A stretch of 64,000 nt of DNA from Macrostomum lignano (taxonomy: Eukaryota). Location: positions 218,554-282,553 of the forward strand of contig NIVC01000553.1 in NCBI GenBank assembly GCA_002269645.1, written 5' to 3'. Shown in pieces: positions 44,505-64,000 of the stretch. The translations under genes and the position numbers were made by a program. How positions within the stretch are numbered: the first letter of the stretch is position 1; each line of letters begins with the position of its first letter. The notes under the pieces were generated by a model. That model made no database searches and was not told the origin of the DNA. It was given only the letters and a program-made list of their open reading frames with translations.

Positions 44505-44549
44505 TTAGGGTTAGGGTTAGGGTTAGGGTTAGGCTAGGGTTAGGGTTAG
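44505..44549 (+). repeat. Interstitial telomere-type (TTAGGG)~7
   Basis: Direct; a more degenerate equivalent at 44088-44130. Confidence 0.9.
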
Positions 44550-44853: not shown

Positions 44854-45498
44854 TCGACCAACACGCCTGGAGCTGAAGGCGGCCTGTCTCAGGTGCCCGA
44901 TCGGCCACGGCGCAACTCGGACCAAGGCCGAGTCCGCATCGTTGCCCCGGCAACCGCCGGCGCGGCTTCGTCGAGCGGCTCCTCGGCTTCGAATCGACGC
45001 TCGACAGTGAAGCAGTTTTTCGACAATTTCCGGCCGCGAGCCAAGTCCGAGTGCGCCCAGTCCATCGCTAGGCCGGCCGGCGGGAAGAACAGGAAAGCCA
45101 GCGGGGAAGAGAACGACTCGTCCTCGACTGCGGCAAACGGCGACAAACTCGACAGCAGCGTCGACGGCAATTTGGCAACAATTCGTCAGGGTGAAGAGTT
45201 TGTTGGCGCAGCAGTTCAAAGCTCGAAGAAGCGGTCGCGCAGTCCGCTGGGCCTCGTGAACCGGCTGAAGAGCTTGGCTGTGTCGTCCAACTCGACCGGA
45301 CCATCGGAGGCTGGCGGCTCGTCCTCTGCCGCCGCCGCCGCCGGAGATCAAAGCCGCTACCGGAGGCGATCCGGAACTGCCGGCATTGCCGGGTCCCAGC
45401 CGGGCCAGCTGCACAGCCTGCCGCATCCCAGCGAGATGCCGCTCGACTGCGCCTATCACGACGACGTCTGCGTTGACAAGCGGAACCGGATTCGAAAG
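44854..45498 (+). CDS. PRKAG: AMPK gamma gene, Ser-rich N-terminal extension exon
   Basis: Acceptor TTTTCCCTCCCTGACAG|, open frame STNTPG...KQFFDNFRPRAKSE...NRIRK, donor AAG|GTGGGT phase 0. Confidence 0.75.
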
Positions 45499-45534: not shown

Positions 45535-45790
45535 TGTTTGGATTTCCCAGATTATGGAAATCCTTGTAGGATTCCCTGTTTGGATTTCCCAGATTATGGA
45601 AATCCTTGTAGGATTCCCTGTTGGGATTTCCCAGATTAGGGAAATCCTTGTAGGATTCCCTGTTTTGATTTTCCAGATTAGGTAAATCCCTGGGAATTCC
45701 TGGTTTGGATTTCCCTTATCTGGGAAATTCCTAGGTATTCCCTGTTGGATTTCCCGATCTTAGGGTTTCTCAGATAAGGGAAATCACTAG
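45535..45790. repeat. ~42-bp degenerate repeat with internal GATTTCC..GGAAATC palindrome
   Basis: Direct. Confidence 0.8.
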
Positions 45791-46119
45791 GGAGGTTTTC
45801 CGTTTGTTTTTTCTGTTGTGGGCGTTTTCCACAGTTGTGAAATCTTTCGGATTTATCCAGTTGGAAATTCCCAGGGGTTTTCAAAGTTGGAATTTTCCTG
45901 GTATTTTTACATTTTGGAATTTCTAGAATTTCCTAAATACCTTGAATGCTCCAATTTGAAATTGCCCGGAATTTCACAGTTTAAATTTCTGGGACTTCTT
46001 ACCTCCCTGGGATTCTTCCACTTTGGAACACCCAGGGTTTCGTTTCTGGGGATTCGTAAGTTTTCTTGTTTTTTACATGCAAATTCTGCATTAAGTACTC
46101 CCCCCTGGTGGGTCTCATC

Positions 46120-46545
46120 ACTAGAATCCCCCTGATGCGGTTTCCTCATTTAGGGATTCCCCTGATGGGCTTCCCTCGTTTAGGGATTCCCCTGATGGGC
46201 TTCCCTCGTTTAGGGATTCCCCTGATGGGCTTCCCTCGTTTAGGGATTCCCCTGATGGGCTTCCTTCGTTTAGGGATTCCCCTGATGGGCTTCCCTCGTT
46301 TAGGGATTCCCCTGATGGGCTTCCCTCGTTACCCCTGATGGGCTTCCCTCGTTTAGGGATTCCCCTGATGGGCTTCCCTCGTTTAGGGATTCCCCTGATG
46401 GGCTTCCCTCGTTTAGGGATTCCCCTGATGGGCTTCCCTCGTTTAGGGATTCCCCTGATGGGCTTCCTTCGTTTAGGGATTCCCCTGATGGGCTTCCCTC
46501 GTTTAGGGATTCTCTTAATGGGGTTTCTTCGTTTAGGGATTTCCA
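46120..46545. repeat. 30-bp minisatellite (CCCCTGATGGGCTTCCCTCGTTTAGGGATT)n
   Basis: Direct. Confidence 0.95.
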
Positions 46546-46904
46546 TGATCTATCATAAAAACACAGTATCTTTTCACTGTTTATTCGGGAAAATGTTATA
46601 GCTACTCGGAAAAATTGCATAACGCTTATGACAATATAATCTTGTTTATTTGCTTCTAGTACTATACGTAAAGTACACATCATTCCGATTGGTATTTTAG
46701 GCTATTTCAGTGGATGAGTCTTACAGCAACCCGGTAAGATCCCACAGTTGCTTAATTGCTCATTAATGAGCAAATGTCTCGTGCACTCAACCATTTCTAG
46801 TGCCCATTGTGTAGTCTGTGCCGTGATTTTCTTAATAAACTCTACATTTTTATCGCAAACGTTTATGGTTGCTGATTATTTTTTTATAAATTTAGCATCA
46901 TTCT

Positions 46905-47460: not shown

Positions 47461-47760
47461 TAAAGTCAATTTCTTTATTCGTGATTATGCTTGCGATTAT
47501 TGCTCTTACTAAACGCGATTATAAACCTTATTATAAAGCTTGTTTCTTTCGATAATAATCATTATAATATCTTAGATATATTGGCACTTAATATGAACGG
47601 TTTGATTTACTTTGCACTTTACTATTAGTAGATTGTGAATATTGCGCGCGTTTTTTCTGAGAATTTTTCCTCCAATAAGTGCATTAGATAAAAGTGATAA
47701 CTTGTGAGATTTATTGGTTCTTAAGTATATATAATTCACTGTAAATTTTTGTTCCCACAG

Positions 47761-47845
47761 AACTCATACCCGCCACAGGCCGGCAATATTCAAGACAGAC
47801 ATCGCGATCTGTTTGAAAATCTGAGCCACTCTGCCGATGTTGAGG
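47761..47845 (+). CDS. PRKAG: AMPK gamma gene, 85-nt internal exon (NSYPPQAG...SADVE)
   Basis: TTTTTGTTCCCACAG| acceptor and |GTGAGT donor; open in phase 0; 85 nt converts the phase-0 donor at 45498 into the phase-1 acceptor at 51756. Confidence 0.7.
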
Positions 47846-47989
47846 GTGAGTTAAGTGGATTGTTGCAGCTTCAAACTGCAAGGCATTATAACAAAGTTTA
47901 GTCTCAGTTAAACTTAATTTCTTCAATTTTTGGTTCAGTTAATTGAATGTTATTAAATTAAATTAGATTGGTTTAGGTGTCGAATCGTC

Positions 47990-49720
47990 TCTGGCCCAAG
48001 TCCCTCCCTCAGTGTAGCTTAGGTGTCACAATAGTCTAAGCTAAGGCCTAAGTCCCTCCCTCAGTGTAGCTTAGGTGTCACAATAGTCTAAGCTAAGGCC
48101 CAAGTCCCTCCCTCAGTGTAGCTTAGGTGTCACAATAGTCTAAGCTAAGGCCCAAGTCCCTCCCTCAGTGTAGCTTAGGTGTCACAATAATCTAAGCTAA
48201 GGCCCAAGTCCCTCCCTCAGTGTAGCTTAGGTGTCACAATAGTCTATGGCCCAAGTCCCTCCCTCAGTGTAGCTTAGGTGTCACAATAGTCTAAGCTAAG
48301 GCCCAAGTCCCTCCCTCAGTGTAGCTTAGGTGTCACAATAGTCTAAGGCTCAAGTCCCTCCCTCAGTGTAGCTTAGGTGTCACAATAGTCTAAGGCCCAA
48401 GTCCCTCCCTCAGTGTAGCTTAGGTGTCACAATAGTCTAAGGCCCAAGTCCCTCCCTCAGTGTAGCTTAGGTGTCACAATAGTCTAAGCTAAGGCCCAAG
48501 TCCCTCCCTCAGTGTAGCTTAGGTGTCACAATAGTCTAAGCTAAGGCCCAAGTCCCTCCCTCAGTGTAGCTTAGGTGTCACAATAGTCTAAGCTAAGGCC
48601 CAAGTCCCTCCCTCAGTGTAGCTTAGGTGTCACAATAGTCTAAGGCCCAAGTCCCTCCCTCAGTGTAGCTTAGGTGTCACAATAGTCTAAGCTAAGGCCC
48701 AAGTCCCTCCCTCAGTGTAGCTTAGGTGTCACAATAGTCTAAGGCCCAAGTCCCTCCCTCAGTGTAGCTTAGGTGTCACAATAGTCTAAGGCCCAAGTCC
48801 CTCCCTCAGTGTAGCTTAGGTGTCACAATAGTCTAAGGCCCAAGTCCCTCCCTCAGTGTAGCTTAGGTGTCACAATAGTCTAAGGCCCAAGTCCCTCCCT
48901 CAGTGTAGCTTAGGTGTCACAATAGTCTAAGCTAAGGCCCAAGTCCCTCCCTCAGTGTAGCTTAGGTGTCACAATAGTCTAAGCTAAGGCCCAAGTCCCT
49001 CCTCAGTGTAGCTTAGGTGTCACAATAGTCTAAGCTAAGGCCCAAGTCCCTCCCTCAGTGTAGCTTAGGTGTCACAATAGTCTAAGCTAAGGCCCAAGTC
49101 CCTCCCTCAGTGTAGCTTAGGTGTCACAATAGTCTAAGGCCCAAGTCCCTCCCTCAGTGTAGCTTAGGTGTCACAATAGTCTAAGGCCCAAGTCCCTCCC
49201 TCAGTGTAGCTTAGGTGTCACAATAGTCTAAGGCCCAAGTCCCTCCCTCAGTGTAGCTTAGGTGTCACAATAGTCTAAGGCCCAAGTCCCTCCCTCAGTG
49301 TAGCTTAGGTGTCACAATAGTTTAAGGCCCAAGTCCCTCCCTCAGTGTAGCTTAGGTGTCACAATAGTCTAAGCTAAGGCCCAAGTCCCTCCCTCAGTGT
49401 AGCTTAGGTGTCACAATAGTCTAAGCTAAGGCCCAAGTCCCTCCCTCAGTGTAGCTTAGGTGTCACAATAGTCTAAGCTAAGGCCCAAGTCCCTCCCTCA
49501 GTGTAGCTTAGGTGTCACAATAGTCTAAGCTAAGGCCCAAGTCCCTCCCTCAGTGTAGCTTAGGTGTCACAATAGTCTGGCCCAAGTTCCTCCCTCAGTG
49601 TAGGTGTGTAGTTGAGGCGTTACAATAGTCTATGACCAAAATCCCTCTCCATTGTAGCTTAGACGTCACAATAGTCTATGGCTCAACTTTCTCTCCAGTG
49701 CAGCCTAGGCGTTGGAATAC
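47990..49720. repeat. 47/52-bp satellite, array 2
   Basis: Same unit with an optional GCTAA insert. Confidence 0.97.
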
Positions 49721-49795
49721 TCTATTAGATTAGATTAAATAAGTTTGATTTGGTTTATTTAAATCAATTTGCACTTCAATTTAAATTCGTTAGTT

Positions 49796-51175
49796 GTTGT
49801 TAAACGGGGTGGGAGGAGGAGCGCTGCCCGCGGATCAGCCCTAAGGGAGCTCTGCCGCATGGATCTTGCTGTGGGCCATACTACCAGGGGCTTAGAGCCC
49901 GAGAGGCATTGGAGCTACTAACCCAAGCCTATGGACTAAGACACTGCCAACCCAAAAGTGGAATCAGGGACGGTGCTAGGACCGAGTCCACCCAGGCCAC
50001 CCCCCAGCAGACAAGTCTTTGGGAGTGCGCAAAAAATTGGGATTGAAAAATGTTTGGGTTACTACTGAAAGCGGTCCGAGAGCGGGGGGACCCCGAAGTC
50101 TACGGAAATGGCTTAAATTAATTGGAGCGAGTCTGGGCAGCTTATTTACCAAGGGCGAGTCTCCTATCAAGAGGTAAAAATGCTCAAAAACCCTCTTATA
50201 GGGCTGCAAGTCTCAAGGCTTTTTCACTACCCAGCTCTAAACAATTGGAGCACTGCTAAAGCAAGGCTAAAAAATTGGAGTGAGTCTGGAAGGCTTGTAT
50301 CCGAGGGCGAGTCTCCTATCAGGCAGGAAGACCGTCTATCTATAGGGCTGCGAGCCACAAGGGTGTCACCTATCCAGCTCTATACAGGGCCAGGCCAAGG
50401 GGTCGGGAAGGGGGCACCCAGTGCAAGAGGACCCGGACTCAGCCGGTATCCCCGGTACGAGACGAACTTCCAACCCAGGACTCCATTCCACTGTCAGGAT
50501 GAGAGCCAGAGACACACAGGCAGGGAACTTCCAGAGGAGCCAGCAGGTGGACCAAGGCTATGTATGGAGCACGCTCACCGAGGCGAAATCGATAAAGTCC
50601 AATTAATTGGATGGCTCAAGTGCCAAGATAAAACCGGAGAATAAAACATTGGGAATAAAACTTGGGAGGATCACACAACCTCAGGGGCTCAGTCTCAGGA
50701 CTGGCATGCTACTGGGCTCTACCGTACACCTTTGTGAATGGTCATTTTCTTTCCTGCAGGGCGGGTGCAAGCGGGGGCTTAAGTCCCGTCCTAGTCACAC
50801 TGCAGTCCAGAGATCACACTCACTCCGGGCACACCCCCCTCCCCCTAAACCAATTCAAGGCCGAGGGCCGAAAAGCTAATAATTGGAATGAATGAAAAGG
50901 GTTATTTTTATAACAGGCACAGCCCCTCCATGGCGGACCCTTAGAAAATTGGGCTAGCCAGAGCTAGGCCAATCGGATTGCGCACAACCCTTAAAAATGC
51001 CGCCAGAGAGGCAGCCAGGGTAAGAGCAGTCAGAGATAGGGGCCCGTTCTATAAAGCCATTGTAAGATAAGATCGTTCTTAGCTCCTATCTCCTCAGTGT
51101 AAAAGTTCCGACGTACGATCGAACTTACGCTACGACAGCTTTATAATACGACCCCACCGTCTTTACGGCGTTAAC
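49796..51175 (-). mobile_element. Unclassified 1.38-kb noncoding insertion with 14-bp TSD, probably retroposed; spliced-leader-like 5' end
   Basis: TAAATTCGTTAGTT at 49782-49795 and 51176-51189; minus-strand 3' end ...TTTAACAAC; 5' end GTTAAC-GCCGTAAAGACGGT; internal duplication near 50120-50240 and 50275-50380. Confidence 0.55.
51030..51169 (-). ncRNA. Spliced-leader-RNA-like sequence (atypical)
   Basis: GCCGT-AAAG-ACGGT 5' hairpin, 41-nt exon-like segment, then GTAAGT donor in a stem-loop; lacks terminal ATG and a canonical Sm site. Confidence 0.3.
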
Positions 51176-51755
51176 TAAATTCGTTAGTTAAAAACAGACG
51201 GAGCCTCAGAAAGTGCTCCGTGTGTTTGTTCTGTTTTGTTTTACTTTGTTACTTTGTTTATTTGTTTGTTAATAATAAAATAACTGGATGGGCCACTCAG
51301 GCATATATACTTGGTAAAACAGCTTTCTACTTTTAGTTCAGTAGCAAAGAATGCACAACCTATTATATAAAAACAAAAGCAGCTGAAATGACTTTGATAA
51401 GTTTAGAAGCCTGAGCTTACAGGCGTAAACAACTTGCTAATTGGTTCAGCAATAATGTACAACAATTGTCTACATTAGCCAGTCCACTGAAATGTAGATG
51501 GCAGCTTTAGGCTGGAATTCCGAGAAAGGCAATAAAAATTGAGGCGGAGCGGGGGTAAAGTGGAAATGCGCGATTGGAGGGTTTAAGCGGGGGGAGGGGA
51601 GTAAAGAGCTAATAAATGAGCCTTGACTTAAAAAAACATTAAAATGCTTCTGTTTAACTCACTACTGAACTGAAAGTAGCTTACACGCAAATGTGCTGGG
51701 TAGCCCATCTAGTTATTCTAGTAGTTAAGAGTTACCGTCTCCAACGATCCCGCAG

Positions 51756-52302
51756 GCCAGTGCAGCATTCTGTCCCCAGCCGCTGTCGCAGAGTCCCAGG
51801 CTCGTTCCCGGCGCCTCTCCGGCCCCAACCTGCCAATGCCGGCTCGTTTAGCTGCGCCAAGCGCTGTTGGCGCCGTTGCCGGCTCCAATTCTGGCGCCCC
51901 AGATCTGGGCTGCTGCGGGCGTCGGCGCACCTTGTCTGGCGCCGCCACCTTGACCACTAAGGACGTGCAGGTGACCGAGAATGACAAGTACATCATCTTC
52001 AAGTCCAAATGCCAGAAATCGGACTGCTTCAGTGCCAACCTGGAGGAGATTCAACTGGAGCTGGCGCTTGGCCAGCCAAGCCAAGTGTTTGAGCTGCTCA
52101 CCCGCCATCACACTTGCTACGATTTGATTCCAACTAGCAGCAAGCTGCTGGTGTTTGACACCAACCTCAACGTGAGGAAGGCATTCTTTGCTTTGGTCTA
52201 CAACGGCCTGAGAGCTGCGCCGCTGTGGGACTCGGACAGGCAGAAATTTGTTGGCATACTCACTGTGACTGATTTCATCTACATTCTGCACAAGTACTAC
52301 AG
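51756..52302 (+). CDS. PRKAG: AMPK gamma subunit exon (CBS1)
   Basis: [60 protein letters not shown]; acceptor CCCGCAG|, donor AG|GTGAG. Confidence 0.95.
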
Positions 52303-52671
52303 GTGAGAAATTGAGCCTAACGTTTCAGCCCGCAGCAAGGGGAAAGGCAAGTTTAAAGCCCCGCCACCCCAACCCCTAACCGCGCAGACAGCCCCCAGCC
52401 AATCGCCGCCGCGCAAGGAGAGAAAATAATGCGCATTGGCCAGCCAGGGTTTGGGGAGGGGTAGACAGACAGACAGGGGTAGAGAGAAAAGCTCCCAGCC
52501 AGCCAACCAGCGAGCAGTAAGCAATTATAGCAAGTAGCAAGGGTCAAAGATGACAAAGTACCAACACAACACAACCAGTAATTAACGCTACATATCGGAT
52601 ATACGAGCTACAAAGGTGCAATATCTTGTTATCCAGTGTGTTTTTCTCTTTTTCAGTTACCCTAATGATTT

Positions 52672-52941
52672 GGGGGCCGTAGCCTAATGGTCTACCGCAG
52701 CGCTCTCATATTCCACCGGCCTATGCTCGATTCCAAGTGCAGTCACACTAATTTGGGGGTAACTTGGAATCTGGGCTTGGATCTGCAATCAACGACCTTG
52801 AGGACCAACCCCCTATCAAGGCACAGTGAAGTGTACATGCTCAACGATAGATAAAGTTAGGTCCGCTGTACACTCCTGTGCGAGTATGTGCATGCTCAGG
52901 GGAGTCGGCGGAATGGGCAGTAATGCCTCTAATCCAAATCC
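52672..52941 (+). mobile_element. tRNA-headed SINE family A, copy 2 (intronic)
   Basis: GGGGCCGTAGCCTAATGG..GCTCGATTCC; shared body with 11601-11890; AATCCAAATCC tail. Confidence 0.8.
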
Positions 52942-52989
52942 GCAGCCAGATGTCGTTAATAAGCCCCACACGCCTCTCGCCCTGGCCAG

Positions 52990-53428
52990 GTCCGCCCTCG
53001 TCCCCATGGAGGTGCTGGAGACGCATCGCATCAGCACCTGGCAAGCCGAATTGAGCAGTCAGCTCAAACCTTTGACTTGGATCTCGCCTGAGGCTTCACT
53101 CTACGACGCTATTCGAGTCCTGCTTCACTCGCGAGTCCACCGCCTGCCGGTTATCGATCCGCTAACTGGCAACGCGCTGTACATTGTCACTCACAAGCGG
53201 GTGCTGAAATTCATCTGCCTGTACGCCCACCAGCTGCCCATGCCCGGCTGGCTGGACCAACCGATTATCCAGCTGGGCATCGGCACCCATTCTAATATTG
53301 TCACGGTCAGCGGGACCACTTCGTTAGTGAAAGTCCTGTCGCTGTTTGTGCAGAACAGGGTCAGCGCTCTGCCTGTGCTGAGCTCGGATGGCCGCCTCAC
53401 CGATATCTACTCCAAGTTCGACGTGATT
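52990..53428 (+). CDS. PRKAG: AMPK gamma subunit exon (CBS2-CBS3)
   Basis: [56 protein letters not shown]; phase-2 join to the previous exon; donor ATT|GTGAG. Confidence 0.96.
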
Positions 53429-53465
53429 GTGAGCTTGCTAGCTGGCTGCTGAGTCTTGCATGAAC

Positions 53466-54560
53466 ATCTGTCTCTCTCTCCTCTCCATCTCCTCTCCTCT
53501 CCCTCTCCCTCTCCTCTCCTCTCCTCTCCCTCTCCTCTCCCTCTCATCTCCATCTCCTCTCCTCTCCCTCTCCTCTCCATCTCCTCTCCTCTCCCTCTCC
53601 TCTCCCTCTCTTCTCCCTCTCCCTCTCCATCTCCCTCTCCATCTCCTCTCCTCTCCCTCTCCTCTCCCTCTCCTCTCCCTCTCCTCTCCCTCTCCTCTCC
53701 ATCTCCTCTCCTCTCCCTCTCCTCTCCCTCTCCTCTCCCTCTCCCTCTCCCTCTCCTCTCCCTCTCCTCTCCCTCTCCCTCTCCATCTCCTCTCCCTCTC
53801 CCTCTCCATCTCCCTCTCCCTCTCCTCTCCCTCTCCCTCTCCATCTCCCTCTCCATCTCCTCTCCCTCTCCCTCTCCTCTCCCTCTCCATCTCCCTCTCC
53901 CTCTCCCTCTCCATCTCCTCTCCCTCTCCCTCTCCTCTCCCTCTCCCTCTCCTCTCCCTCTCCTCTCCCTCTCCCTCTCCCTCTCCATCTCCCTCTCCCT
54001 CTCCCTCTCCCTCTCCTCTCCCTCTCATCTCCCTCTCCCTCTCCTCTCCCTCTCCTCTCCCTCTCCTCTCCATCTCCCTCTCCTCTCCCTCTCCCTCTCC
54101 TCTCTCTCACCTCTCCCTCTCCATCTCCCTCTCCATCTCCTCTCCCTCTCCCTCTCCTCTTCCTCTCCTCTCCCTCTCCTCTCCCTCTCCCTATACCTCT
54201 CCTTTCCCTCTCCCTCTCATCTCCCTCTCCCTCTCCTCTCCCTCTCCTCTCCCTCTCCTCTCCATCTCCCTCTCCTCTCCCTCTCCCTCTCCTCTTCCTC
54301 TCCTCTCCCTCTCCTCTCCCTCTCCCTATACCTCTCCTTTCCCTCTTCCTCTCCATCTCCCTCTGCCTCTCCCTCTCTTCTCCCTCTCATCTCCCTCTCC
54401 CTCTCCCTCTCCATCTCCTCTTTCTCCCTTCTCTTCATCTCCATCTCCCTCTCCATGTACCTTTCTTCTTCATCTCTGGCTCTGTCTTCCTTTCTAGTAT
54501 TTTTCCTCCAATAGTCTTTGGTCTCTTCCTCTCCCTCTCTCTCCCCTCTCCCCCGCCTCC
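53466..54560. repeat. CT-rich (CTCCCT/CTCCT)n intronic tract
   Basis: Direct. Confidence 0.95.
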
Positions 54561-54681
54561 CTCACCTCGTCCATGACCTAGACCGCCTCTTCGCCAAGGT
54601 ATTCCGCTTCATTTCTATTGTGTGGCCCAGCCTAATAGAGGTGGTTTAAATCTTAATCATTGAATAAATTTAACCTTGCAG

Positions 54682-54984
54682 AACCTGGCCGCTACAAAAA
54701 CGTACAACAACTTGGACATCTCCGTAGCCGAGGCTCTCCAATACAGACGCGAGCGCTTCGAAGGTGTCAGCAAGTGCAGCTCGGATGCCACGTTGAAAGC
54801 TGTGATTGACCAGCTGGTCCAAGACGAAGTGCACCGGCTGGTTATAGTGGACCAAGACAATCGAGTCACCGGCATGGTGTCCCTGTCGGACGTGCTCAAC
54901 GCTCTGGTGCGAGACTATGAGCGACTGGCCGACCACTGCAGCCAACCGGGCGTTGCTAGGGAAACTCTTGAGACCGGTCTGTAA
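54682..54984 (+). CDS. PRKAG: AMPK gamma subunit terminal exon (CBS4)
   Basis: TTGCAG|NLAATKTYNNLD..FEGVSKC..EVHRLVIVD..GMVSLSDVL; stop TAA. Confidence 0.96.
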   Translation, partial: NLAATKTYNNLDISVAEALQYRRERFEGVSKCSSDATLKAVIDQLVQDEVHRLVIVDQDNRVTGMVSLSDVLNALVRDYERLADHCSQPGVARETLETGL

Positions 54985-55119
54985 ACTGCCGGATGACGTC
55001 ACAACTGCTTGATTGAATCTGTTTCTTCGCACTGCGTGATTTTTAATTAACCGTCAGGTTTTTTTACGATTGGGTTTTCGCGGGGCCAAGCCAGGGCTTT
55101 TTATTATGGGTAGCGCGCC

Positions 55120-55530
55120 TTGGGGGCGCCATCTTGGGGGCGCCGTCTTGATGGCGTCGTCTTTGGGGCGCCGTCTTAGGGGCGCCATCTTTTCGGCGCC
55201 ATCGTAAGGGACGTCATCTTGGGGGTGGAGGGGGGGAGGCACCAGCACCAAGGGGCGCCAGCTGCCAGCACCAAGGGGCGCCAGCACCAAGGGGCGCCAG
55301 CACCAAGGGGCGCCAGCACCAAGGGGCGCCAGCACCAAGGGGCGCCAGCACCAAGGGGCGCCAGCACCAAGGGGCGCCAGCACCAAGGGGCGCCAGCACC
55401 AAGGGGCGCCAGCACCAAGGGGCGCCAGCACCAAGGGGCGCCAGCACCAAGGGGCGCCAGCACCAAGGGGCGCCAGCACCAAGGGGCGCCAGCACCAAGG
55501 GGCGCCAGCACCAAGGGGCGCCAGCACTAA
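55120..55530. repeat. GC-rich GGGGCGCC-core repeats; 16-bp unit (CCAGCACCAAGGGGCG)n from about 55240
   Basis: Direct. Confidence 0.9.
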
Positions 55531-56239
55531 TCGCGCAATTACATCCACCTTGTCTTTCTTCCTTCAGCTCCTATCCCTGCTCATAGTACATAATCTTAGC
55601 TTGTTCAGACTAGTCTATTAAAACTAATTGTAGAAAGTATAAAAGTAAGATCGACTACATACTACGAGCGTACAGTAGAAACTGGCCTTCCATTTTAAAC
55701 ACGTGTTTATTGTAAATTCATTCTGTCTCATTTGTCCTTCAGTCTTTACTCCGCGCTCAAAGTTCTATATAATAACTTAGGTCGTATGCAGTGCACCGTT
55801 CGTTCTGCTTGTTTATTAATTATATTCAACGGTGACCTTAAAGATACCGTATTTTCTTATTTTTTTGTTATTTTTGTAACTGCAGTTTTCATATTCTGCG
55901 TCTCTTATTTTACCTTCCCTTCGACTTCCGTTGTTTTGAATGAAAGCATAGTTTCGTCATTTCGTAAGCCTGATAATCTTGAAAATTGGAAAAATTTGTT
56001 AATTGAAAACTAGCTAATATTGTGCTTCAATTCGATGATAATAACGCTCGTATTAATATAATAAATTTACGTCTTTTTCAGGGTATAGTGTACGCAACTA
56101 AGCTAACCAAAGGTACATGCCCTCATGACCTTACTCTCCAAGGCCTATGTGTACAGTGTACATGTACATTCACCCGCCTCACATCTGAATGAATGCCATT
56201 CTCCCAAAGCCCATCACTTGATTGTAGGGCTCTTTTCAA

Positions 56240-56735
56240 GCTAAACATCGCTTGAATGTACGCACATTCCCGGCCCAGCCCCCCCCCCAGAAAACTATCG
56301 CCCGATTGTGGCCCAGTCCCCCCAGAAAACTATCGCTTGAATGTACGCACATTCCCAGCCCAGCCCCCCCAGAAAACTATCGCCCGATTGTGGCCCAGTC
56401 CCCCAGAAAACTATCGCTTGAATGTACGCACATTCCCAGCCCAGCCCCCCCCCCCCAGAAAACTATCGCCCGATTGAGGCCCAGTCCCCCAGAAAACTAT
56501 CGCTTGAATGTACGCTCTTTCTTCGGCATAGTCCCCCCCCCCAAAAAAAAACTATCGCCCGATTGTGGCCCAGTCCCCCAGAAAACTATCGCTTGAATGT
56601 ACGCACATTCCCAGCCCAGCCCCCCCCCCCAGAAAACTATCGCCCGATTGAGGCCCAGTCGGCCCCCAGAAAACCATCGCTTGAATGTACGCACATTCCC
56701 CGGCCCGGTCCCCCCAGAAAACCATCGCTTGAATA
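56240..56735. repeat. ~65-70-bp minisatellite (CAGAAAACTATCGC core)
   Basis: Direct. Confidence 0.85.
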
Positions 56736-57254
56736 TATACGCACTCCCTCGATCCCTCCAAGCCCAAGCCCCCCCCCCCGCCTAACCAACCGTCATGTTA
56801 ATATACTCGTACATTTACATCTACGCACTCTCATTCCAGTCTCCGTATCAACCATCGTTTGAGTGTACTTAACAATAATGTTTATTACATAGTTTTCTAT
56901 TAAATTAACAGCCCCATATCCCCACTTTTGAGGCTGAAACCAATAAAAATACTAATAAAAATACCCTGCTTTTTTGCATGCATGATTGAGCTTCTGGCGT
57001 TTTTTTAGTTCCACCACCTACGTCACAACCCCAACGCAACTTCTGCACCAAACATGCAATTCGAATTTAATAACTTGTTTGTTTTTGGTTGTTAAATAAT
57101 GAGAACCGTCTGTGCGCACCTGCTGTTTTCTAGACTTAAAACTATCCAAAGATAAAATATAAAACAAAAGTAATAACTTCTGAACTTCTGAAAGTCGATG
57201 TTTTTGCCTTTCTCATTTCGTCGTTCCTTAATTTTTTCCCGTTTGATTTCCGTG

Positions 57255-57562
57255 TCTCTCTGCTGACACTACCGCCTCCCCTGACACTCTACAGTCTCTC
57301 TGCTGACACTACCGCCTCCCCTGACACTCTACTGTCTCTCTGCTGGCACTAACGGCTACCGCCTCCCCTGACACTCTACTGTCTCTCTGCTGGCACTAAC
57401 GGCTACCGCCTCCCCTGACACTCTACTGTCTCTCTGCTGACACTACCGCCTCCCCTGACACTCTACTGTCTCTCTGCTGATACTACCGCCTCCCCTGACA
57501 CTCTACTGTCTCTCTGCTGACACTACCGCCTCCCCTGACACTACTGTCTCTCTGCTGACACT
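57255..57562. repeat. ~40-bp minisatellite
   Basis: gtctctctgctgacactaccgcctcccctgacactctact repeated. Confidence 0.9.
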
Positions 57563-58324
57563 GATTTAGCAAGTGTTTTAATGCAGCTAGTCAAGAGGTT
57601 TAATGATAAGGCAGAAGTAGTTTTCAAACTCCCTTTATTGATGCCATTTTGGCAGCGCACTGGTAAAAAATTGATCGAACAGGGTTTATAATAAAAAATC
57701 AATTAGCACAAATCATTTAGAAAATGCAAACCAAAGCCAATTCATTTTTGTCTAAATTATCTAAAATCTAATTAAATACGAATGATTGTTGATAAAATAT
57801 TGCACACTACTAAAAGTAGAAGTAGCCAATACGAAATTTAAAAAAGCATCTACGACTCGTAAAAAACAAATAAAAACGGCCAAGAGTATAAATATTGATT
57901 GAATCGTCAGGATGGTAATGGAGGAGTACATAAATAGCACTAGCCTATCAAATGTTGTAAAAAAACAAAAAATAATAACCGACAAAAAATTATTGTAGTT
58001 ACAGCTATTACATACGCTTCGAATTTTTGGAAACCATGAGCTATTAATTACTACTTAAAAAACTGTAATTAGTAACATGAACTGCACATTTTGAAAAAAC
58101 GGTAAATTTTTTAAAGAACTAAATATTTGTTTGAAAGTGTTTAGGTGGCACTGTTTTGATCCAAAATGGCACCATCATCTGAAGAGAACACATAACAATC
58201 GAAAACAGAACGTTAAACTCACAAAACCATTTGTCTAAGCTAAGATTAGAATGTCAGAGCCAATCAGACCCATCCAATAGGGCACTTCCACTTCCATATT
58301 TTAGCACATTATTAATGTGTGTAA

Positions 58325-58442
58325 AAACTGGCACCATTATGCTAAAAATGGCAAAATTACGCTAAAATGGCACCATTATGCTAAATGGCACAATATGCTA
58401 AAAATGGCACCATTAGGGTAAAAATGGCACCATTATGCTAAG
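58325..58442. repeat. ~21-bp repeat (AAAATGGCACCATTATGCTA)
   Basis: 5-6 copies. Confidence 0.75.
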
Positions 58443-58618
58443 CGCAAATTCATATCTCTCAAATGACCTTATAAAAATTTTCTAATTTTCAATAAATTCA
58501 TAATGGTCATAGAAACGATTCTCTAAGAAATGTCACTAAAGTACATAATGCTCTATTTAAAGTTAATTGCGGCACCCAATTGATGCAATCAGAGAAAGGC
58601 GAACTGCAGAAGCCCAAT

Positions 58619-59161
58619 TCAAGCTCGGCGGCCCATCAGTCCGGCCGGCGCCGCGGTCCCGCCGCCAGTGGTCTGGAAGAGTCTGCGCACCGCCAGCACC
58701 TGAGCGGCTGCCGCCGAAACCACGCCGAAAATCTCCACAAGCGACCAGGCGCCAACCCGACCGAGTGTGGCCTCCGCTGCCAACCTGTCCGCCGCCTCGT
58801 TAAGCCGCATCCGGCGCTGATAATTGGAGATTGACACGAGGTTGGCTCCGATAATCTGCATCGAATCCAGCATGACTTTGCGGCGTTCCTGATCGTCTTC
58901 ATCCAAACTGGACGACGATGAAGATGACGACAAATCCGGAAATTCCAGCGACTCGTTCTCTTCTCGGCCCGAGCGGAGGGCAAAGTAGACCAACTTTCTG
59001 GCTAAAGCAGAAAATTCATTTGAGAAACAGGCGCGATAGATGCCCGGCTTGGTGACAGAGAACACTCGGCCTCCCTGAGTCTCTTTGTCGGCTGAGAACA
59101 CTGGCTCGCCATCGGGGTCAAAGAGGCGGACATTGATGTCCACATTACCGCCTGATAGAAC
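58619..59161 (-). CDS. TMED: p24/TMED (GOLD) cargo receptor, exon 2; gamma-subfamily-like
   Basis: CCCACAG|VLSGGNVDINV..YRACFSNEFS..KLVYF..QRRMRLNEAADR..RVGAWS..QVLAVRRLF; paralogue not resolved. Confidence 0.92.
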   Translation of the reverse strand, partial: VLSGGNVDINVRLFDPDGEPVFSADKETQGGRVFSVTKPGIYRACFSNEFSALARKLVYFALRSGREENESLEFPDLSSSSSSSSLDEDDQERRKVMLDSMQIIGANLVSISNYQRRMRLNEAADRLAAEATLGRVGAWSLVEIFGVVSAAAAQVLAVRRLFQTTGGGTAAPAGLMGRRA

Positions 59162-59758
59162 CTGTGGGCGGGATCAATTTTAAACAAAATTGAGAGAAAA
59201 TTTGACATTAAGTTCATAAGTTTGCTATATTGCAACTTATAAAGTTTTAACTTTTTCATTTGTTATACTGCATTCAGAAAAACAATAAGTTTAAAAAACA
59301 AATAAAAAGTGGTTAAAATTCTACGAAAGGATAAAAAAAGTGCATTGATTAAAATGTTTAAAGAAATCCTATTTAAATTAAAGTACAGAGATCGTTAACT
59401 CATTTGACAGCTTTGATTTATCATAAACATTAATTAGCTACTTAGTATATTTTACTTAGTATATTTTCAGAAAAATGACAAAAAGCAGAAAAAGTACAAA
59501 CTTACTAATACCAATGCTTAGTAATTAATTAAAAACATTTAATGATATAAAATAAAAAATCAAATTGCATTTTTAAAAAAATCAAATTTAAAGAAATTAA
59601 AGAAGCATACAAGCACTGATATTCTGATAATTATTAATTATTAAATTCAAGTTAAAATAATAACAAACACAATTCCATCCCCATGTCTATGATATAGCCA
59701 AAAGTTTCAATAAATTTTCGTTCATACAATATTGCAATTAATAAACATTAAGACTTAC

Positions 59759-59908
59759 ACGAAAGTCAATCTGAGCTTTGTCATCCGATTCAAATTTTTC
59801 ATAGAAGCAATCTTTTCTTCGCTCGCGCAGTTCAAAAGTGAACTCTGTGCAGCTTGCTTGAAGGCATAAAAAACCCAACGCAAATGTGCTAAGTTTAAGC
59901 GAATTCAT
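59759..59908 (-). CDS. TMED: p24/TMED exon 1 (signal peptide + start of GOLD)
   Basis: MNSLKLSTFALGFLCLQASCTEFTFEL..KDCFYE..IDFR|GTAAGT; phase 0 matches exon 2; 230 aa total. Confidence 0.9.
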
Positions 59909-60633
59909 ATTATAATTTAGCACTTAGCGGCAGCTTTTAAACACTACCTTAACTGTGTGAATTTCTGTGTTCCAGTTGCAGCCCTTAGTGAATTGAATTT
60001 ACTACTAACTTTGAAGAAACTTATTAAATAATTGTAATTACTATAATATTTTTAAGTTATATAATTTGCGACCTAAAACTATTTTCGTCCATCGCAAGAG
60101 ACTCGATACAAAAATACTAAGGAAATAAAAATATTGTTGAAAATACAAGCGAAATAGTTTTTCGTTCGGTCTGAACGGTAGCAGAATAAATTTTAAAATT
60201 TTTATTTGAATTTCGCAGAAACTTTGTTATACCGTGTCTACAACTAAGCCGGTTTGTGAAAAACTTGGCCTGGGGTTGTTTTTGATATTGCTGTGGACCT
60301 AATCTGTAGAAAGCTTAAGGTTAATTATCAAGCTGAAGGCTATGAGAACCTGAATGCAAGAATTTAGTACAAATTAAATATATACATGTACTTGCTTCAA
60401 GAAGGAACAAAAAAAAATTTTACCTGTGTGACTATACCTTGTACATATGATATGCATTGTGCTTGTGCTTATAAAGTAAAAATAAAACTTTCAGTATAAA
60501 ACAATATAAAATAAAACATCGTGACATGTTATTCATGCTAAACTTAACAATGGTAATCTCGATTAGAAATTACAGGAGCGAACGTCAAAAACGTGCAATA
60601 TATTCTTTAGTGAACACATCTTTCAAAATCGTT

Positions 60634-60673
60634 TGCCAACGCGTTTCATCTTAAGCGGACATCATCCAGGGTT
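60634..60673 (-). ncRNA. Degenerate minimal hammerhead ribozyme motif (Penelope-type)
   Basis: Minus strand CCCTGGATGA-T-GTC-CGCTTAA-GAT-GAAAC-GCGTT-GG; one extra G in the CUGAUGA core. Confidence 0.5.
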
Positions 60674-60772
60674 ATCTCGATTACTGCCCTATTAAACCAA
60701 ATGCAATTGTAGTGACTGGCTGCTAACTGGCTATTCAGCAGCATTCACTAGCTAGCTTTCCTTTAAGAGCTC

Positions 60773-61637
60773 TGTGTTCCGCTGCGCAGCAGCTCAATCC
60801 ACCTGATCTAGAGAGAGTTACCCTGTGCTGGGCCTAAGTGTTTACTGCCCGATGACTCAACGCCCGAGCAGGCGCGCAGGCAGCCACACAAAGTTTTCCC
60901 CACTCGCACTGAGGAGACGTAGCAGGATGCAAACGATCATCACCTACCCTCTCGCGCGCGCGGAGTGTAATCGCTGCCTGGAAGGAGTAAACAGGATGAC
61001 TCATCCGCCCAAACTCTATTTTTAGCGCAGTAAAAGCACATGACTGTGCACGCAAGTTGTGCGTGGCAGCTGACCTTGAGTCACGCCACGGTGGCGTGAC
61101 AGGGTTACCTTATTTGGAAGTTGGCCTTGAGTCACGCATCTCTTGCATGACTCCCTGGCCCAAATAAGGAAGTTTCACGCGCTCACCGCATGAAACTCAC
61201 GTGACTTTTGGGGGTTCGATCGGCTATAAATACGGAGCACCTGAGAGCTGTTTTCTTCAGATCCTTGCCGCTGCGCTTGTTGGGCCTCGTCCGGAGCTGC
61301 CTCTCTGCCTCCGAGCTCTCTCCTCTCTCATTTCAGGTTTACAGGTTTTCAGGTTCGAGCAGCAATTTTAGGAACGATCAACTGTCGAGACATCTTCAGA
61401 TTTGCATTGCTCCGAGCGACTTCGTTATTTTATTTCAGGTTACGGATAGACAACTCTGCCGACGCGTCGAGTCCGCAAATCAAGGTGGCAGCAACTACCG
61501 AGACTAAGGCTTACGATTTAGGTTCTTTTCAGGCAAATCGATAGGTAGTACAACGGTACTATCTAGTAGCTACTTCCGGAGCAGCGAGTTCAATTTTAGG
61601 TACATCGTACAGAACTCGGAAAGCATCGCGTAACACA
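60773..61637 (+). mobile_element. Solo-LTR-like element
   Basis: Ends TGTGTTCCGC ... GCGTAACACA (9/10 inverted, TG...CA); TATA CTATAAATA near 61224; GC-richer than flanks; no TSD found. Confidence 0.55.
60853..61232 (+). promoter_or_regulatory. Cluster of 4 AP-1 motifs, 2 CArG boxes and a TATA box
   Basis: TGACTCA 60853 and 60997; TGAGTCA 61077 and 61128; CCTTATTTGG 61108; CCAAATAAGG 61160. Confidence 0.5.
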
Positions 61638-62284
61638 ATCATGGGTTTTTTGATGATTGGTTTTATGAAAATGGCCTTCTAAAAAGTACACGATGAGCTC
61701 TGCGTCCTATTTTATTACAGTGGTCCTTAAGCCACTACAGTATGTTGTTTTGTCTGTCATAATGTATCTGTTGTCCCTGATCTCTGTTCGCCCAGCAGCA
61801 TGCTACTTGACTGCACAATTATCAGTAGTGTATTCCACACAGGAGCAATTGCAGCTTTTCGGTTGAAAACGAATGAAAAATATTAATAAGCGAGATAAAC
61901 AAGATAGTCAGGCATTAGACTCGTCGACCTTTCCCCGTTGGGACAAAATTGCTCACGAACTCCAATCCGAGAGCGATTCAGGTGCCCTCAATGTGGGTGG
62001 AAAGTGGGTGGATGCCTTCTTGCAAGCAGTTTTCCTTTTCATTTATTTTGAATCTCAATTTACAAAGACAGTATAATAAAACGAAGGGAAGTCTCAATTG
62101 GCGATGGAAGGTTCAATTTTTAAAGGAAATCAACTGAGAATGTCACGAGGGCCGATCTTGACATTTTCCTTTTCTAATGCCATTTTGTTTCATGAAGCTG
62201 CATTTTGCTATGACTCCTAATAGCGCATTCTGTTTTAAACGAATGGGCTCCGTTAATTCAATCGTTCGCTTCATGACCTCAAAA

Positions 62285-63435
62285 AAGGGGAGAGGAGAGG
62301 AAGAGAGGAGAGAGCAGGAAGAGAAGAGGGAGTAGGGGAGAGGAGAGGAGAGAGGAGTGGAGAGAGGAGAGAGGAAAGAAGAGGGGGAGAGAGGGAGAGA
62401 GAGGAGAGCCTCCAATACCGGGCACTGACACGGTAAAAAGACCAGGAGCAAAAGGTTTGAATTGTAATAGGAGAGAGGAAAGAAGAGAGGAGAGAGGAGA
62501 GGAGAGAGGAGAGAGGAGAGAGGAAAGAGGAGAGAGGAGAGAGGAGAGAGGAAAGGAGAGAGGAGAGAGGAGAGAGGAAAGAAGAGAGGAGAGAGGAGAG
62601 AGGAGAGAGGAGAGAGGAGAGAGGAGAGAGGAGAGAGGGGAGAAGAGAGGACAGAGGAGAGAGGAAAGAAGAGAGGAGTGAGGAGAGGAGAGAGGAGAGA
62701 GGAGAGAGGAAAGAGGAGAGAGGAGAGAGGAGAGAGGAAAGGAGAGAGGAGAGAGGAGAGAGGAAAGAAGAGAGGAGAGAGGAGAGAGGAGAGAGGAGAG
62801 AGGAGAGAGGAGAGAGGGGAGAAGAGAGGACAGAGGAGAGAGGAGAGAGGAGGAGAGAGGAGAGGAGGGGGAGGAAAGGAGAGATGAGGAGATGAGAGGA
62901 GAGGAGAGAGTAGGGGAGAGATCAGGAGAGAGGAGAGAGGAGAGAGGAAAGGAGAGAGGAGAGAGGAGAGAGGAAAGAGGAGAGAGGAGAGAGGAGAGAG
63001 GAAAGGAGAGAGGAGAGAGGAGAGAGGAAAGAAGAGAGGAGAGAGGAGAGAGGAGAGAGGAGAGAGGAGAGAGGAGAGAGGAGAGAGGAGAGAGGAGAGA
63101 GGAGAGAGGGGAGAAGAGAGGACAGAGGAGAGAGGAGAGAGGAGGAGAGAGGAGAGGAGGGGGAGGAAAGGAGAGATGAGGAGATGAGAGGAGAGGAGAG
63201 AGTAGGGGAGAGATCAGGAGAGAGGAGAGGAAAGAGGAAGAGAGGATAGAAGAGAAGAGAGAGGTGGGGAGAGGAGAGGAATGAGGAGGGGAGAGAGGAG
63301 AGGAAAGAGGAGAGAGGAGAGGAAAGAGGAGAGAGGAGAGGGGAGAGAGGAGAGAGGAGAGAAAACGAAGCAGCGAAGACACAAAAGAAGACAGAGAGGG
63401 AAACAGAGGAGAAAAAGAGGGAGACAAAAAGGGGA
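62285..63435. repeat. Purine-rich (GAGAG/GGAGA)n tract
   Basis: Direct. Confidence 0.95.
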
Positions 63436-64000
63436 TAACTTGAAAAGTGTATCTATTAAGATTAGCTAAAAGCAAGAGAAAGCGTCATTTAAGTTTGAAC
63501 CAAAGCGATTTCAGTTGTTTTTTAACAATGTAAAAATTTTTCAACAATATTTTAACGCTACTGCTGTTCCTTTGTTTATTTTAAAGCTGACGAGGCTAAA
63601 TCCTCCGTTGGAGAAGAAAGGAGATAGAACTCCCATCGACAGAATTCCTTTCCCTGAAATCCATCAGCTGAATCCTATGACCCGAATCCCTTCTTCGAAA
63701 TCCTCTGTAAAACCACTCAAAATACCATATCCTATTTTCCATGTTTGCAACACTTGACTGCCATGGTCCAGACTGAGACTCTCTCCTGTCTCTTCTCTCC
63801 TCTTTCCTTTCTCATCTCTAATCTCTCCTCCCTCATCTCTACTCTATTACATGTATCTATTATCTCTCATCTCTCCTCTTTCCCTTCTCCTTTCGCATGA
63901 AAAAGATACCAAAGACAGAAAAGCAGGCAAAGGAGGGGACTTCTAGAGTTTAAGATCAGTTCCAGTTTTAATGGGATCAAAATTTTGGTCACTATTAAAG

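What the first reader, a model, noticed from the sequence alone, without database searches (positions are those of the whole stretch)
49782..51189. 1.38-kb retroposed-looking insertion whose 5' end resembles a flatworm spliced leader
Seen (minus strand): TSD AACTAACGAATTTA, then GTTAAC, then GCCGTAAAGACGGT (51169-51156), about 1.35 kb of noncoding sequence, an AACAAC tail and the second TSD copy. Established: flatworm SL exons start with a short CCGT-loop-ACGG hairpin, and CRE/SLACS (trypanosomes) and NeSL (nematodes) retrotransposons insert into SL genes. From memory, unverified, the Macrostomum lignano SL begins with this same 14-mer. Inference: (a) a SINE-like element with an SL-RNA-derived head, or (b) a non-autonomous derivative of an SL-targeting retrotransposon transcribed from the SL promoter and carrying the SL stub. 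I know of neither being described in flatworms.
Basis: partly seen in the sequence, partly recalled or inferred. Interest (0 to 1): 0.78.

Follow-up and report, generated by a model that had tools for sequence, protein, structure and literature searches.

The report
Retroposed insert capped by spliced-leader stub
A 1.38-kb non-coding sequence was copied via RNA into an intron of a Macrostomum lignano gene, and its first 14 bases equal the start of the worm's spliced-leader RNA; with only one copy in hand I cannot tell a one-off copying accident from a new family of mobile elements.

Summary
The window is contig NIVC01000553.1 of Macrostomum lignano. A 1,380-bp non-coding insert (51175-49796, minus strand) is flanked by a perfect 14-bp direct repeat. 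It sits antisense in an intron of the AMPK-gamma gene.

After a 6-nt filler (GTTAAC), it begins with GCCGTAAAGACGGT. This equals nt 1-14 of the spliced-leader (SL) RNA, checked against the published M. lignano SL and against an SL RNA gene recovered from a metagenome contig (L007). Identity starts at the base before the published SL, the presumed first transcribed G. It stops after nt 14, and the rest of the SL RNA is not detectably related.

The 14-bp duplication, the AT-rich nick site and the (AAC)n end that overlaps the target by 3 nt fit target-primed reverse transcription. There is no ORF, Pfam, tRNA or Rfam match, and no LTR or TIR ends.

Reading (a), an SL-RNA-derived SINE head, is not supported. 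Reading (b), an SL-promoter-driven element with an SL stub, remains possible.

I found no second copy in about 133 kb of other M. lignano DNA, and no empty site. A genome-wide BLASTN would decide.

The parts
51176..51189 (-). 5' copy of the 14-bp target-site duplication, AACTAACGAATTTA. It is preceded by TTTTT and a 13-bp-stem hairpin at 51192-51227.
51170..51175 (-). 6-nt filler GTTAAC between the duplication and the SL-identical start. It does not match the sequence upstream of the SL gene on L007 (CTCTTT).
51156..51169 (-). GCCGTAAAGACGGT, identical to nt 1-14 of the SL RNA (5' hairpin CCGU-AAAG-ACGG). Identity starts at the base before the published SL and ends after nt 14.
51039..51155 (-). 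Long imperfect hairpin directly after the SL stub. GGGGTCGTATTATAAAGC pairs with GCTTTATAGAACGGGCCCC. It contains a TATAAA-like motif and a GTAAGT. The 137-nt stretch that was folded, stub hairpin included, gives MFE -46.2 kcal/mol, z = -3.55.
49908..50952 (-). Non-coding body with 9 sense-strand CCAAT motifs (1.35 expected). It holds a degenerate direct repeat of about 130 bp (50386-50265 versus 50243-50110, 71% identity).
49796..49801 (-). 3' end ...CCCCGTTTAACAAC. With the first AAC of the duplication it reads (AAC)3, a 3-nt microhomology with the priming strand. There is no poly(A) and no AATAAA.
49782..49795 (-). 3' copy of the 14-bp target-site duplication.
47857..51739 (+). Host intron of the AMPK-gamma (CBS-domain) gene. 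Flanking exons lie at about 47758-47856 and about 51740-52303. The annotated 783-aa gene model spans this region. The insert is antisense to the gene.

Best explanation
[quoted passage not shown] Its cDNA was then extended onto the 5' end of a spliced leader, either free SL RNA or any trans-spliced mRNA, by template switching of the LINE reverse transcriptase.

Proposed steps:
1. An APE-type LINE endonuclease nicked the window's + strand at 5'-..CGTTAGTT|AAAAA-3'.
2. The GTT 3' end paired with the AAC end of the RNA and primed cDNA synthesis.
3. At the 5' end of that RNA (GGGGUCG..., whose G run may include cap-dependent untemplated bases), the enzyme jumped to nt 14 of an SL and copied it to the cap.
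4. The cDNA end was joined to the upstream target with 6 filler nt, and gap repair made the 14-bp duplication.

The product is a dead-on-arrival chimera lying antisense in an AMPK-gamma intron. No function is implied.

Shown: the anatomy, the exact 14-nt identity beginning at the base before the published SL, the lack of any further SL RNA similarity, the non-coding nature, and the intronic antisense position.
Inferred: TPRT, the type of endonuclease, and the template switch.
For: - TPRT hallmarks: perfect 14-bp duplication, TT|AAAAA nick site, and a 3-nt AAC overlap between tail and target.
- A sharp GC step at both boundaries.
- The SL identity covers exactly nt 1-14. It begins at the base before the published SL (the presumed first transcribed base), and the 5' flanks are unrelated (GTTAAC versus CTCTTT). 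This points to acquisition from RNA rather than DNA.
- Nothing beyond nt 14 resembles the SL RNA, as expected if only the SL 5' end was copied.
- A G run lies at the junction.
- No second copy in the window, L001, L002, L004, L009 or L010. No protein-database trace of any of its ORFs.
- About 30% of M. lignano genes are SL trans-spliced, so SL 5' ends are the commonest RNA 5' ends in the cell (PMC8629364).
- snRNA-LINE chimeras made by template switching are well documented in mammals and fungi (my own knowledge: Buzdin et al. 2002-2003; Gilbert et al. 2005; Garcia-Perez et al. 2007).
Against: - Known chimeras usually carry the whole small RNA (for example full-length U6), because the enzyme jumps to the acceptor's 3' end. 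Here only 14 of about 109 nt are present, which needs an internal landing site or a 14-nt SL fragment as acceptor.
- There is no visible microhomology at the T14|GGGG junction.
- About 133 kb is far too small a sample of a 580-764 Mb genome to show the element is single-copy.
- No empty site was found, so even the insertion event rests on anatomy alone.
Confidence: 0.4

Rival explanations
1. An SL-promoter-driven retroposon family. A master copy sits inside an SL RNA gene after nt 14. It is transcribed from the SL promoter starting at the first SL base, so every retroposed daughter carries the 14-nt stub. This copy is a daughter that landed outside the SL genes. The stub might also help 5'-junction repair when the element re-inserts into SL genes, or act as an initiator element carried within the transcript.
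For: - The stub starts exactly at the base before the published SL and has a sharp end.
- There is direct precedent. SLACS, CRE and CZAR interrupt trypanosomatid SL exons at nt 11/12, and NeSL-1 targets nematode SL1 genes (my own knowledge; PMC4640811).
- NeSL-related LIN/R5 LINEs with varied small-RNA-gene targets exist in planarians (PMC4640811).
- The loop of the SL hairpin offers a TTT|A nick site on the bottom strand. A second nick at 14|15 would then leave exactly nt 1-14 upstream (inference from the sequence).
- The sub-repeated, CCAAT-rich body looks more like a repeat-family member than a random transcript.
- In parasitic flatworms, 597 candidate SL loci with only partial leader sequences lie next to LTR or LINE elements (PMC12582326).
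Against: - This copy is not in an SL gene, and its target resembles neither the SL nor a site-specific RLE-type target.
- No second copy in about 133 kb of other M. lignano DNA.
- The one SL gene recovered (L007) is intact.
- The eight M. lignano SL genes are described as canonical 109-bp units (PMC8629364).
- There are no RT or endonuclease remnants.
Confidence: 0.33
2. A retrocopy of a normally trans-spliced RNA in which about 30 nt of the SL (nt 14/15 to 43/44) were skipped by the reverse transcriptase or deleted later. What is left would be SL nt 1-13, plus UG or U, plus an exon starting GGG...
For: - Retroposed trans-spliced transcripts are the accepted source of SL relics in dinoflagellates and of partial leaders near LTR or LINE elements in parasitic flatworms (PMC12582326).
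- The junction ...ACGG|UG|GGG can be read as SL 1-13 plus the terminal UG of ...GCAUG (sequence).
Against: - It needs an extra, precisely placed deletion with at most 1 nt of microhomology.
- 5' truncation, the usual route to partial leaders, removes the 5' part of the SL, and here the 5' part is what is kept.
Confidence: 0.08
3. A SINE whose head is a whole SL RNA, diverged except for the first hairpin.
For: - There is a GTAAGT 41 nt from the start, roughly where the SL donor site lies.
- There are U-rich stretches.
Against: - No similarity beyond nt 14.
- No AUG before the GU, which is the conserved mark of flatworm SLs (PMC12582326).
- The element is 1,380 bp long with 14 T runs of four or more.
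- No Rfam or tRNA-like hit.
Confidence: 0.04
4. Not a retro-insertion at all: a chance 14-bp repeat and a chance 14-mer, or a DNA-level event such as a solo LTR, a MITE, or filler DNA captured at a break.
For: - Six direct-repeat pairs of at least 14 bp occur in the non-tandem part of the window.
- No empty site was found.
- The ends show a weak inverted resemblance (GTTAACG / CGTTTAAC).
Against: - The SL 14-mer is expected 5e-4 times per window, yet it lies 6 nt from the boundary in the right orientation.
- The GC content steps at both boundaries.
- There are no TG...CA ends and no 4-6-bp duplication. A true LTR-type insertion in L004 shows TGTAG...CTACA with a 4-bp duplication, for contrast.
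- 14 bp is long for a DNA-transposon duplication.
- The SL identity starts at the base before the published SL, with flanks unrelated to the SL gene.
Confidence: 0.06

Closest known systems
U6-L1 and other snRNA-LINE chimeric retrocopies (template-switch chimeras of mammals and fungi)
   Same: The 5' part is the exact 5' end of an abundant capped small nuclear RNA. The 3' part is an unrelated retroposed RNA. One duplication flanks the whole chimera. TPRT hallmarks are present.
   Different: Only 14 nt of the small RNA are present rather than the full length. The partner is an SL RNA (or the SL on an mRNA), which to my knowledge has not been reported. The tail is (AAC)n-like, not poly(A). The host is a flatworm.
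SLACS / CRE1-2 / CZAR (trypanosomatids) and NeSL-1 (nematodes): non-LTR retrotransposons specific to SL genes
   Same: They work alike if the family reading is right: the element lies downstream of a short SL stub (11 nt in SLACS/CRE, 14 nt here) and could be transcribed from the SL promoter.
   Different: Those elements are autonomous (RT plus restriction-like endonuclease), about 6-7 kb long, and found inside SL genes. This one is non-coding, 1.38 kb long, inserted in an AT-rich intronic site, and no SL-gene copy is known.
SL relics in retroposed trans-spliced transcripts (dinoflagellates; partial leaders next to LTR/LINE elements in parasitic flatworms, PMC12582326)
   Same: A piece of SL lies at the 5' end of a retroposed or retroelement sequence in a trans-splicing organism.
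   Different: Trans-splicing adds the whole SL, and truncation then removes its 5' end. Here only the 5' 14 nt are present and the 3' 30 nt, including the AUG, are missing.
Pr77 signature of trypanosomatid retroposons (L1Tc/NARTc/ingi/RIME/SIDER)
   Same: A short 5' signature shared by autonomous and non-autonomous retroposons that acts as an internal Pol II promoter. It is a model for how a 5' stub could matter.
   Different: There is no sequence relation. No family and no promoter activity have been shown here.

Membership tests
Non-LTR (TPRT) retroposed insertion | Target-site duplication of variable length, about 7-20 bp | tested here: met
   Perfect 14-bp duplication, the only two copies in the window.
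Non-LTR (TPRT) retroposed insertion | AT-rich first-strand nick site, with the 3' end of the element (poly(A) or simple repeat) abutting the duplication | tested here: met
   Bottom-strand site 5'-GTTAGTT|AAAAA-3'. The tail AACAAC overlaps the AAC of the target. There is no poly(A).
Non-LTR (TPRT) retroposed insertion | An empty (pre-insertion) site exists in an allele, a duplicated copy of the locus (homeolog) or a relative | tested here: inconclusive
   The duplicated loci L001 and L004 lose synteny at window position ~56.3-57.2 kb, before the site. The paralogous loci L002, L009 and L010 align only in exons.
Interspersed repeat family (any) | Several copies at different sites | tested here: inconclusive
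   One copy in the window. None in about 133 kb of other M. lignano loci. No ORF trace in the protein database. No whole-genome DNA search was available.
SINE | Short (under about 700 bp) with an internal Pol III promoter derived from tRNA, 7SL or 5S | tested here: not met
   1,380 bp; no tRNA-like region; no Rfam hit; 14 runs of four or more T on the sense strand.
SL RNA gene or SL-RNA-derived head | SL exon ending in AUG, then a GU donor, an Sm-like site and a three-hairpin RNA of about 100 nt | tested here: not met
   Only nt 1-14 match. The remainder aligns no better than shuffles do (910 of 1000 score at least as high).
SL-gene-specific RLE retrotransposons (SLACS/CRE/CZAR/NeSL) | Inserted at a fixed position inside SL RNA genes | tested here: not met
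   The flanks are AT-rich intronic DNA of the AMPK-gamma gene, not an SL gene.
SL-gene-specific RLE retrotransposons (SLACS/CRE/CZAR/NeSL) | Encodes reverse transcriptase and a restriction-like endonuclease | tested here: not met
   No ORF over 154 aa. Six-frame Pfam scan is empty at E<=1.
SL-gene-specific RLE retrotransposons (SLACS/CRE/CZAR/NeSL) | A short SL stub directly upstream of the element | tested here: met
   14 nt identical to SL nt 1-14.
Template-switch chimeric retrocopy | 5' part starts at the first base of an abundant small RNA, with one duplication around both parts | tested here: met
Template-switch chimeric retrocopy | 5' part is usually the full-length small RNA | tested here: not met
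   14 of about 109 nt.
LTR / solo LTR / DIRS terminus | TG...CA ends with a 4-6-bp duplication (LTR); no duplication (DIRS) | tested here: not met
   The ends are GTTAAC...AACAAC with a 14-bp duplication. A real LTR-type insertion in L004 has TGTAG...CTACA and a 4-bp duplication.

The most novel reading that the evidence does not exclude
M. lignano harbours a family of non-autonomous retroposons whose transcripts start with the first 14 nt (the 5' hairpin) of the spliced-leader RNA. The master copy would interrupt an SL RNA gene after nt 14 and use its promoter, as SLACS and CRE do in trypanosomes. Unlike those elements, it would disperse stub-bearing daughters across the genome. That would be the first SL-associated retroelement in flatworms and the first retroposon with an SL-derived 5' end.
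Probability: 0.33. Interest if true: 0.75.

Novelty: new member of a known kind. Interest (0 to 1): 0.45.

Why it matters
If the stub is a family feature, flatworms would join trypanosomes and nematodes as hosts of retroelements that exploit SL RNA genes. The 5' SL hairpin would then be a candidate portable initiation or capping signal, and M. lignano is a transgenic model in which that can be tested.

If it is a one-off chimera, it is direct evidence that a flatworm LINE reverse transcriptase switches templates in vivo onto SL-capped RNAs. It is also a caution for pipelines that find SL genes and for counts of trans-spliced retrocopies.

In either case the insert is probably neutral for the host: it is intronic and antisense.

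Tried and rejected
1. Rfam at gathering thresholds on the whole window, and at E<=10 on 49500-51500: no SL, hammerhead, HDV-like or other credible hit.
2. Exact look-up of the 154-aa ORF, and a concatenated six-frame ORF query against 5.8 billion proteins, to fish out other copies: nothing.
3. Empty-site search through duplicated copies of the locus. The emp24 neighbour gave L001, L004 and L005. L005 is the window itself at 100% identity. L001 and L004 lose synteny before the AMPK-gamma gene.
4. The AMPK-gamma paralogues L002, L009 and L010 share only exons, at about 75% identity.
5. I judged it impractical to rebuild the annotated 783-aa product in order to reach its 90% cluster, because the first roughly 100 aa come from unknown upstream exons.
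6. A degenerate SL/element pattern scanned against metagenome contigs gave one real SL gene (L007) and two chance hits in a bacterial nuoL gene (L006, L008). Viral and prokaryotic genome scans were empty.
7. Trying to reach M. lignano SL loci through the neighbouring gene on L007 failed: its cluster has a single member.
8. Alignment of the SL RNA with the head and with the whole element showed nothing significant beyond nt 14.
9. tRNA-like head: none.
10. LTR, TIR or MITE reading: rejected on the ends and the duplication length.

Full report
**Source and setting**

The window comes from Macrostomum lignano.
- An emp24/TMED ORF at 58619-59143 (minus strand) is 97% identical to BOX15_Mlig022161g1.
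- Locus L005 is part of contig NIVC01000553.1 of assembly GCA_002269645.1 (record positions 267172-288461, reversed). It is 100% identical to window 48619-64000. L005 is therefore the window itself, not an independent copy.
- The window is dominated by satellites: Tandem Repeats Finder returned 88 rows.

The finding lies between a 46-52-bp satellite (47993-49712) and a roughly 450-bp MITE-like element (51272-51723). All three lie inside an intron of an AMPK-gamma (CBS-domain) gene on the + strand. The gene's exons map at about 44995-45498, 47758-47856, 51740-52303, 52988-53428 and 54682-54984. The annotated 783-aa gene model spans the site. The insert is antisense to this gene.

**The observation**

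- The 14-mer AACTAACGAATTTA occurs exactly twice in the window, at 51189-51176 and 49795-49782 on the minus strand. The expected number is 0.01.
- Between the two copies lie 1,380 bp. They begin GTTAAC-GCCGTAAAGACGGT-GGGG and end CCCACCCCGTTTAACAAC.
- A 14-bp direct repeat is not rare by itself. Six pairs of at least 14 bp, spaced 100-5000 bp, occur in the 37.9 kb of the window that is not tandem repeat.
- This pair is not low-complexity, and it marks a composition step: 52% GC inside against 33-39% outside.

**The spliced-leader match is real**

- The published M. lignano SL is CCGTAAAGACGGTCTCTTACTGCGAAGACTCAATTTATTGCATG (PMC5173321).
- A degenerate pattern scan of metagenome contigs recovered an SL RNA gene whose exon is identical to that SL (L007, Ga0302322_100095745). 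It reads ...AAACTCTTT|GCCGTAAAGACGGTCTCTTACTGCGAAGACTCAATTTATTGCATG|GTAAGACACCGG...GTATTTTTAGCAGCCCTTTCATGGGCTTCC.
- L007 probably comes from another flatworm that has the same SL. Its neighbouring gene has no cluster mate at 90% identity or above.
- The element shares the G plus 13 nt, that is nt 1-14. The sequences on the 5' side differ (GTTAAC versus CTCTTT), and so do those on the 3' side (GGGGTCG versus CTCTTAC).
- With the 14-mer removed, the head aligns to the SL RNA no better than shuffled sequence: 910 of 1000 shuffles score at least as high. A local alignment against the whole element is also not significant.
- An exact 14-mer is expected about 5e-4 times in the window. Here it lies 6 nt from the boundary, in the orientation the tail predicts.

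**What the insert is not**

- It has no ORF over 154 aa and no Pfam hit in six frames at E<=1.
- It has no tRNA-like region and no Rfam family, including hammerhead and HDV-like ribozymes.
- It has no terminal direct repeats. The inverted resemblance of its ends is weak (7 of 8 nt).
- It lacks TG...CA ends. For contrast, the duplicated locus L004 carries a 3.1-kb insertion in the emp24 intron with TGTAG...CTACA ends and a 4-bp duplication, which is what an LTR-type insertion looks like in this genome.
- The sense strand has 14 runs of four or more T and no AATAAA. A full-length Pol III transcript is therefore implausible, and the RNA was not conventionally polyadenylated.

**Anatomy**

- The first 14 nt fold into the SL hairpin.
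- The next roughly 117 nt form a long imperfect hairpin. The 137-nt stretch that was folded, stub hairpin included, gives MFE -46.2 kcal/mol and z = -3.55.
- The body has nine sense-strand CCAAT motifs (1.35 expected) and a degenerate direct repeat of about 130 bp.
- The 3' end, GTTTAACAAC, runs into the AAC of the target.

**Mechanism**

The hallmarks fit target-primed reverse transcription by an APE-type LINE.
- The priming strand reads 5'-...CGTTAGTT|AAAAA-3'.
- Its GTT end can pair with the AAC end of the RNA.
- The staggered second nick gives the 14-bp duplication.
These steps are inferred, not shown. I could not obtain an empty site:
- The duplicated loci L001 (about 93% identity) and L004 (97-99%) are syntenic only down to window position ~56.3-57.2 kb.
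- The only other AMPK-gamma loci are old paralogues.

**Origin of the SL stub**

The stub starts at the base before the published SL, the presumed first transcribed base. It has none of the SL gene's upstream flank. It therefore most likely came from RNA. Two routes fit.
- Template switching. On reaching the 5' end of the primary template, the reverse transcriptase switched onto an SL 5' end. About 30% of M. lignano genes are trans-spliced (PMC8629364), so these are the commonest 5' ends in the cell. The result is a one-off chimera like the U6-L1 chimeras of mammals (my own knowledge).
- SL-promoter-driven family. The element belongs to a family whose master copy interrupts an SL gene after nt 14 and is transcribed from the SL promoter. 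SLACS and CRE do this with an 11-nt stub (my own knowledge). NeSL-related, target-specific LINEs are known in planarians (PMC4640811).

Evidence bearing on the choice:
- The loop of the SL hairpin offers a TTT|A nick site that would leave exactly nt 1-14 upstream (inference).
- Against the switch: known chimeras usually carry the whole small RNA.
- Against the family: this copy is not in an SL gene. I found no second copy in the window or in about 133 kb of other M. lignano DNA. The SL genes described so far are intact.

I put the switch at about 0.40 and the family at about 0.33. A retroposed trans-spliced RNA with an internal SL deletion gets about 0.08. A literal SL-RNA-headed SINE gets about 0.04. 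Chance or a DNA-level event gets about 0.06. The remainder is unassigned.

**Comparison with what is known**

Partial leader sequences next to LTR and LINE elements have been noted in parasitic flatworms. There were 597 such loci, and the authors attributed them to integration of trans-spliced retroelement transcripts (PMC12582326). That route keeps the 3' part of the SL, not the 5' 14 nt seen here.

Neither an SL-snRNA chimeric retrocopy nor an SL-stub retroposon turned up for flatworms in the papers I searched. This copy fails the membership tests for SINE, SL RNA gene, SLACS/CRE/NeSL and LTR. It meets those for a TPRT insertion.

**Verdict**

A template-switch chimera is an equally good or slightly better explanation. 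The case is modestly interesting as it stands. One genome-wide BLASTN would settle it.

Noticed in passing
window 51272-51723; L001 19235-19671: A roughly 450-bp MITE-like element with terminal inverted repeats of about 60-75 bp lies 83 bp from the insert. A copy at 83% identity lies at a non-syntenic place in L001 (NIVC01000035.1).
   Followed up: partly
L004 10474-13577 versus window ~59437: The duplicated locus L004 (NIVC01000036.1) has a 3.1-kb LTR-type insertion (TGTAG...CTACA ends, 4-bp duplication AGCT) in the emp24 intron. It is absent from the window and from L001. It has no match in the other loci fetched.
   Followed up: partly
window ~56300-57250 versus L001 and L004: Synteny with both duplicated copies of the emp24 locus ends inside satellite arrays (40-bp and 89-bp repeats). 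L001 and L004 continue together, whereas the window continues into the AMPK-gamma gene. This is either a real rearrangement or an assembly join within a satellite.
   Followed up: partly
window 44505-44549: An interstitial telomere-type repeat, (TTAGGG) x 7.7, lies upstream of the AMPK-gamma exon at about 44995.
   Followed up: no
window 53471-54454, 47993-49712 and 45535-46549: The introns of the AMPK-gamma gene are filled with satellites: (TCTCCC)n of about 1 kb, a 46-52-bp array of about 1.7 kb, and 30-42-bp arrays. Only about 59% of the window (37.9 of 64 kb) is not tandem repeat.
   Followed up: no
L007 599-615 (Ga0302322_100095745): Seventeen nt upstream of the SL RNA gene there is a partial duplicate of the SL start (GCCGTAAAC). 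The contig shows that a JGI environmental metagenome contains DNA of a flatworm with the M. lignano SL. An ORF of 382 aa that I took to be Na/K-ATPase-beta-like lies 1.1 kb downstream.
   Followed up: no
window 51192-51227: A 13-bp-stem hairpin followed by a T run (terminator-like on the minus strand) lies directly upstream of the insertion site.
   Followed up: no
window 51294-51373 (minus strand): A weak, sub-threshold Rfam match to the C/D-box snoRNA family snR61/Z1 (23.4 bits, E = 0.92) lies inside the MITE-like element. It is probably chance.
   Followed up: no
protein search: The window's own AMPK-gamma product (783 aa in the gene table) did not appear among the hits. The best M. lignano hit was only 69% identical, so no recent duplicate of this gene appears to be annotated, unlike its emp24 neighbour, which has three copies.
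   Followed up: partly
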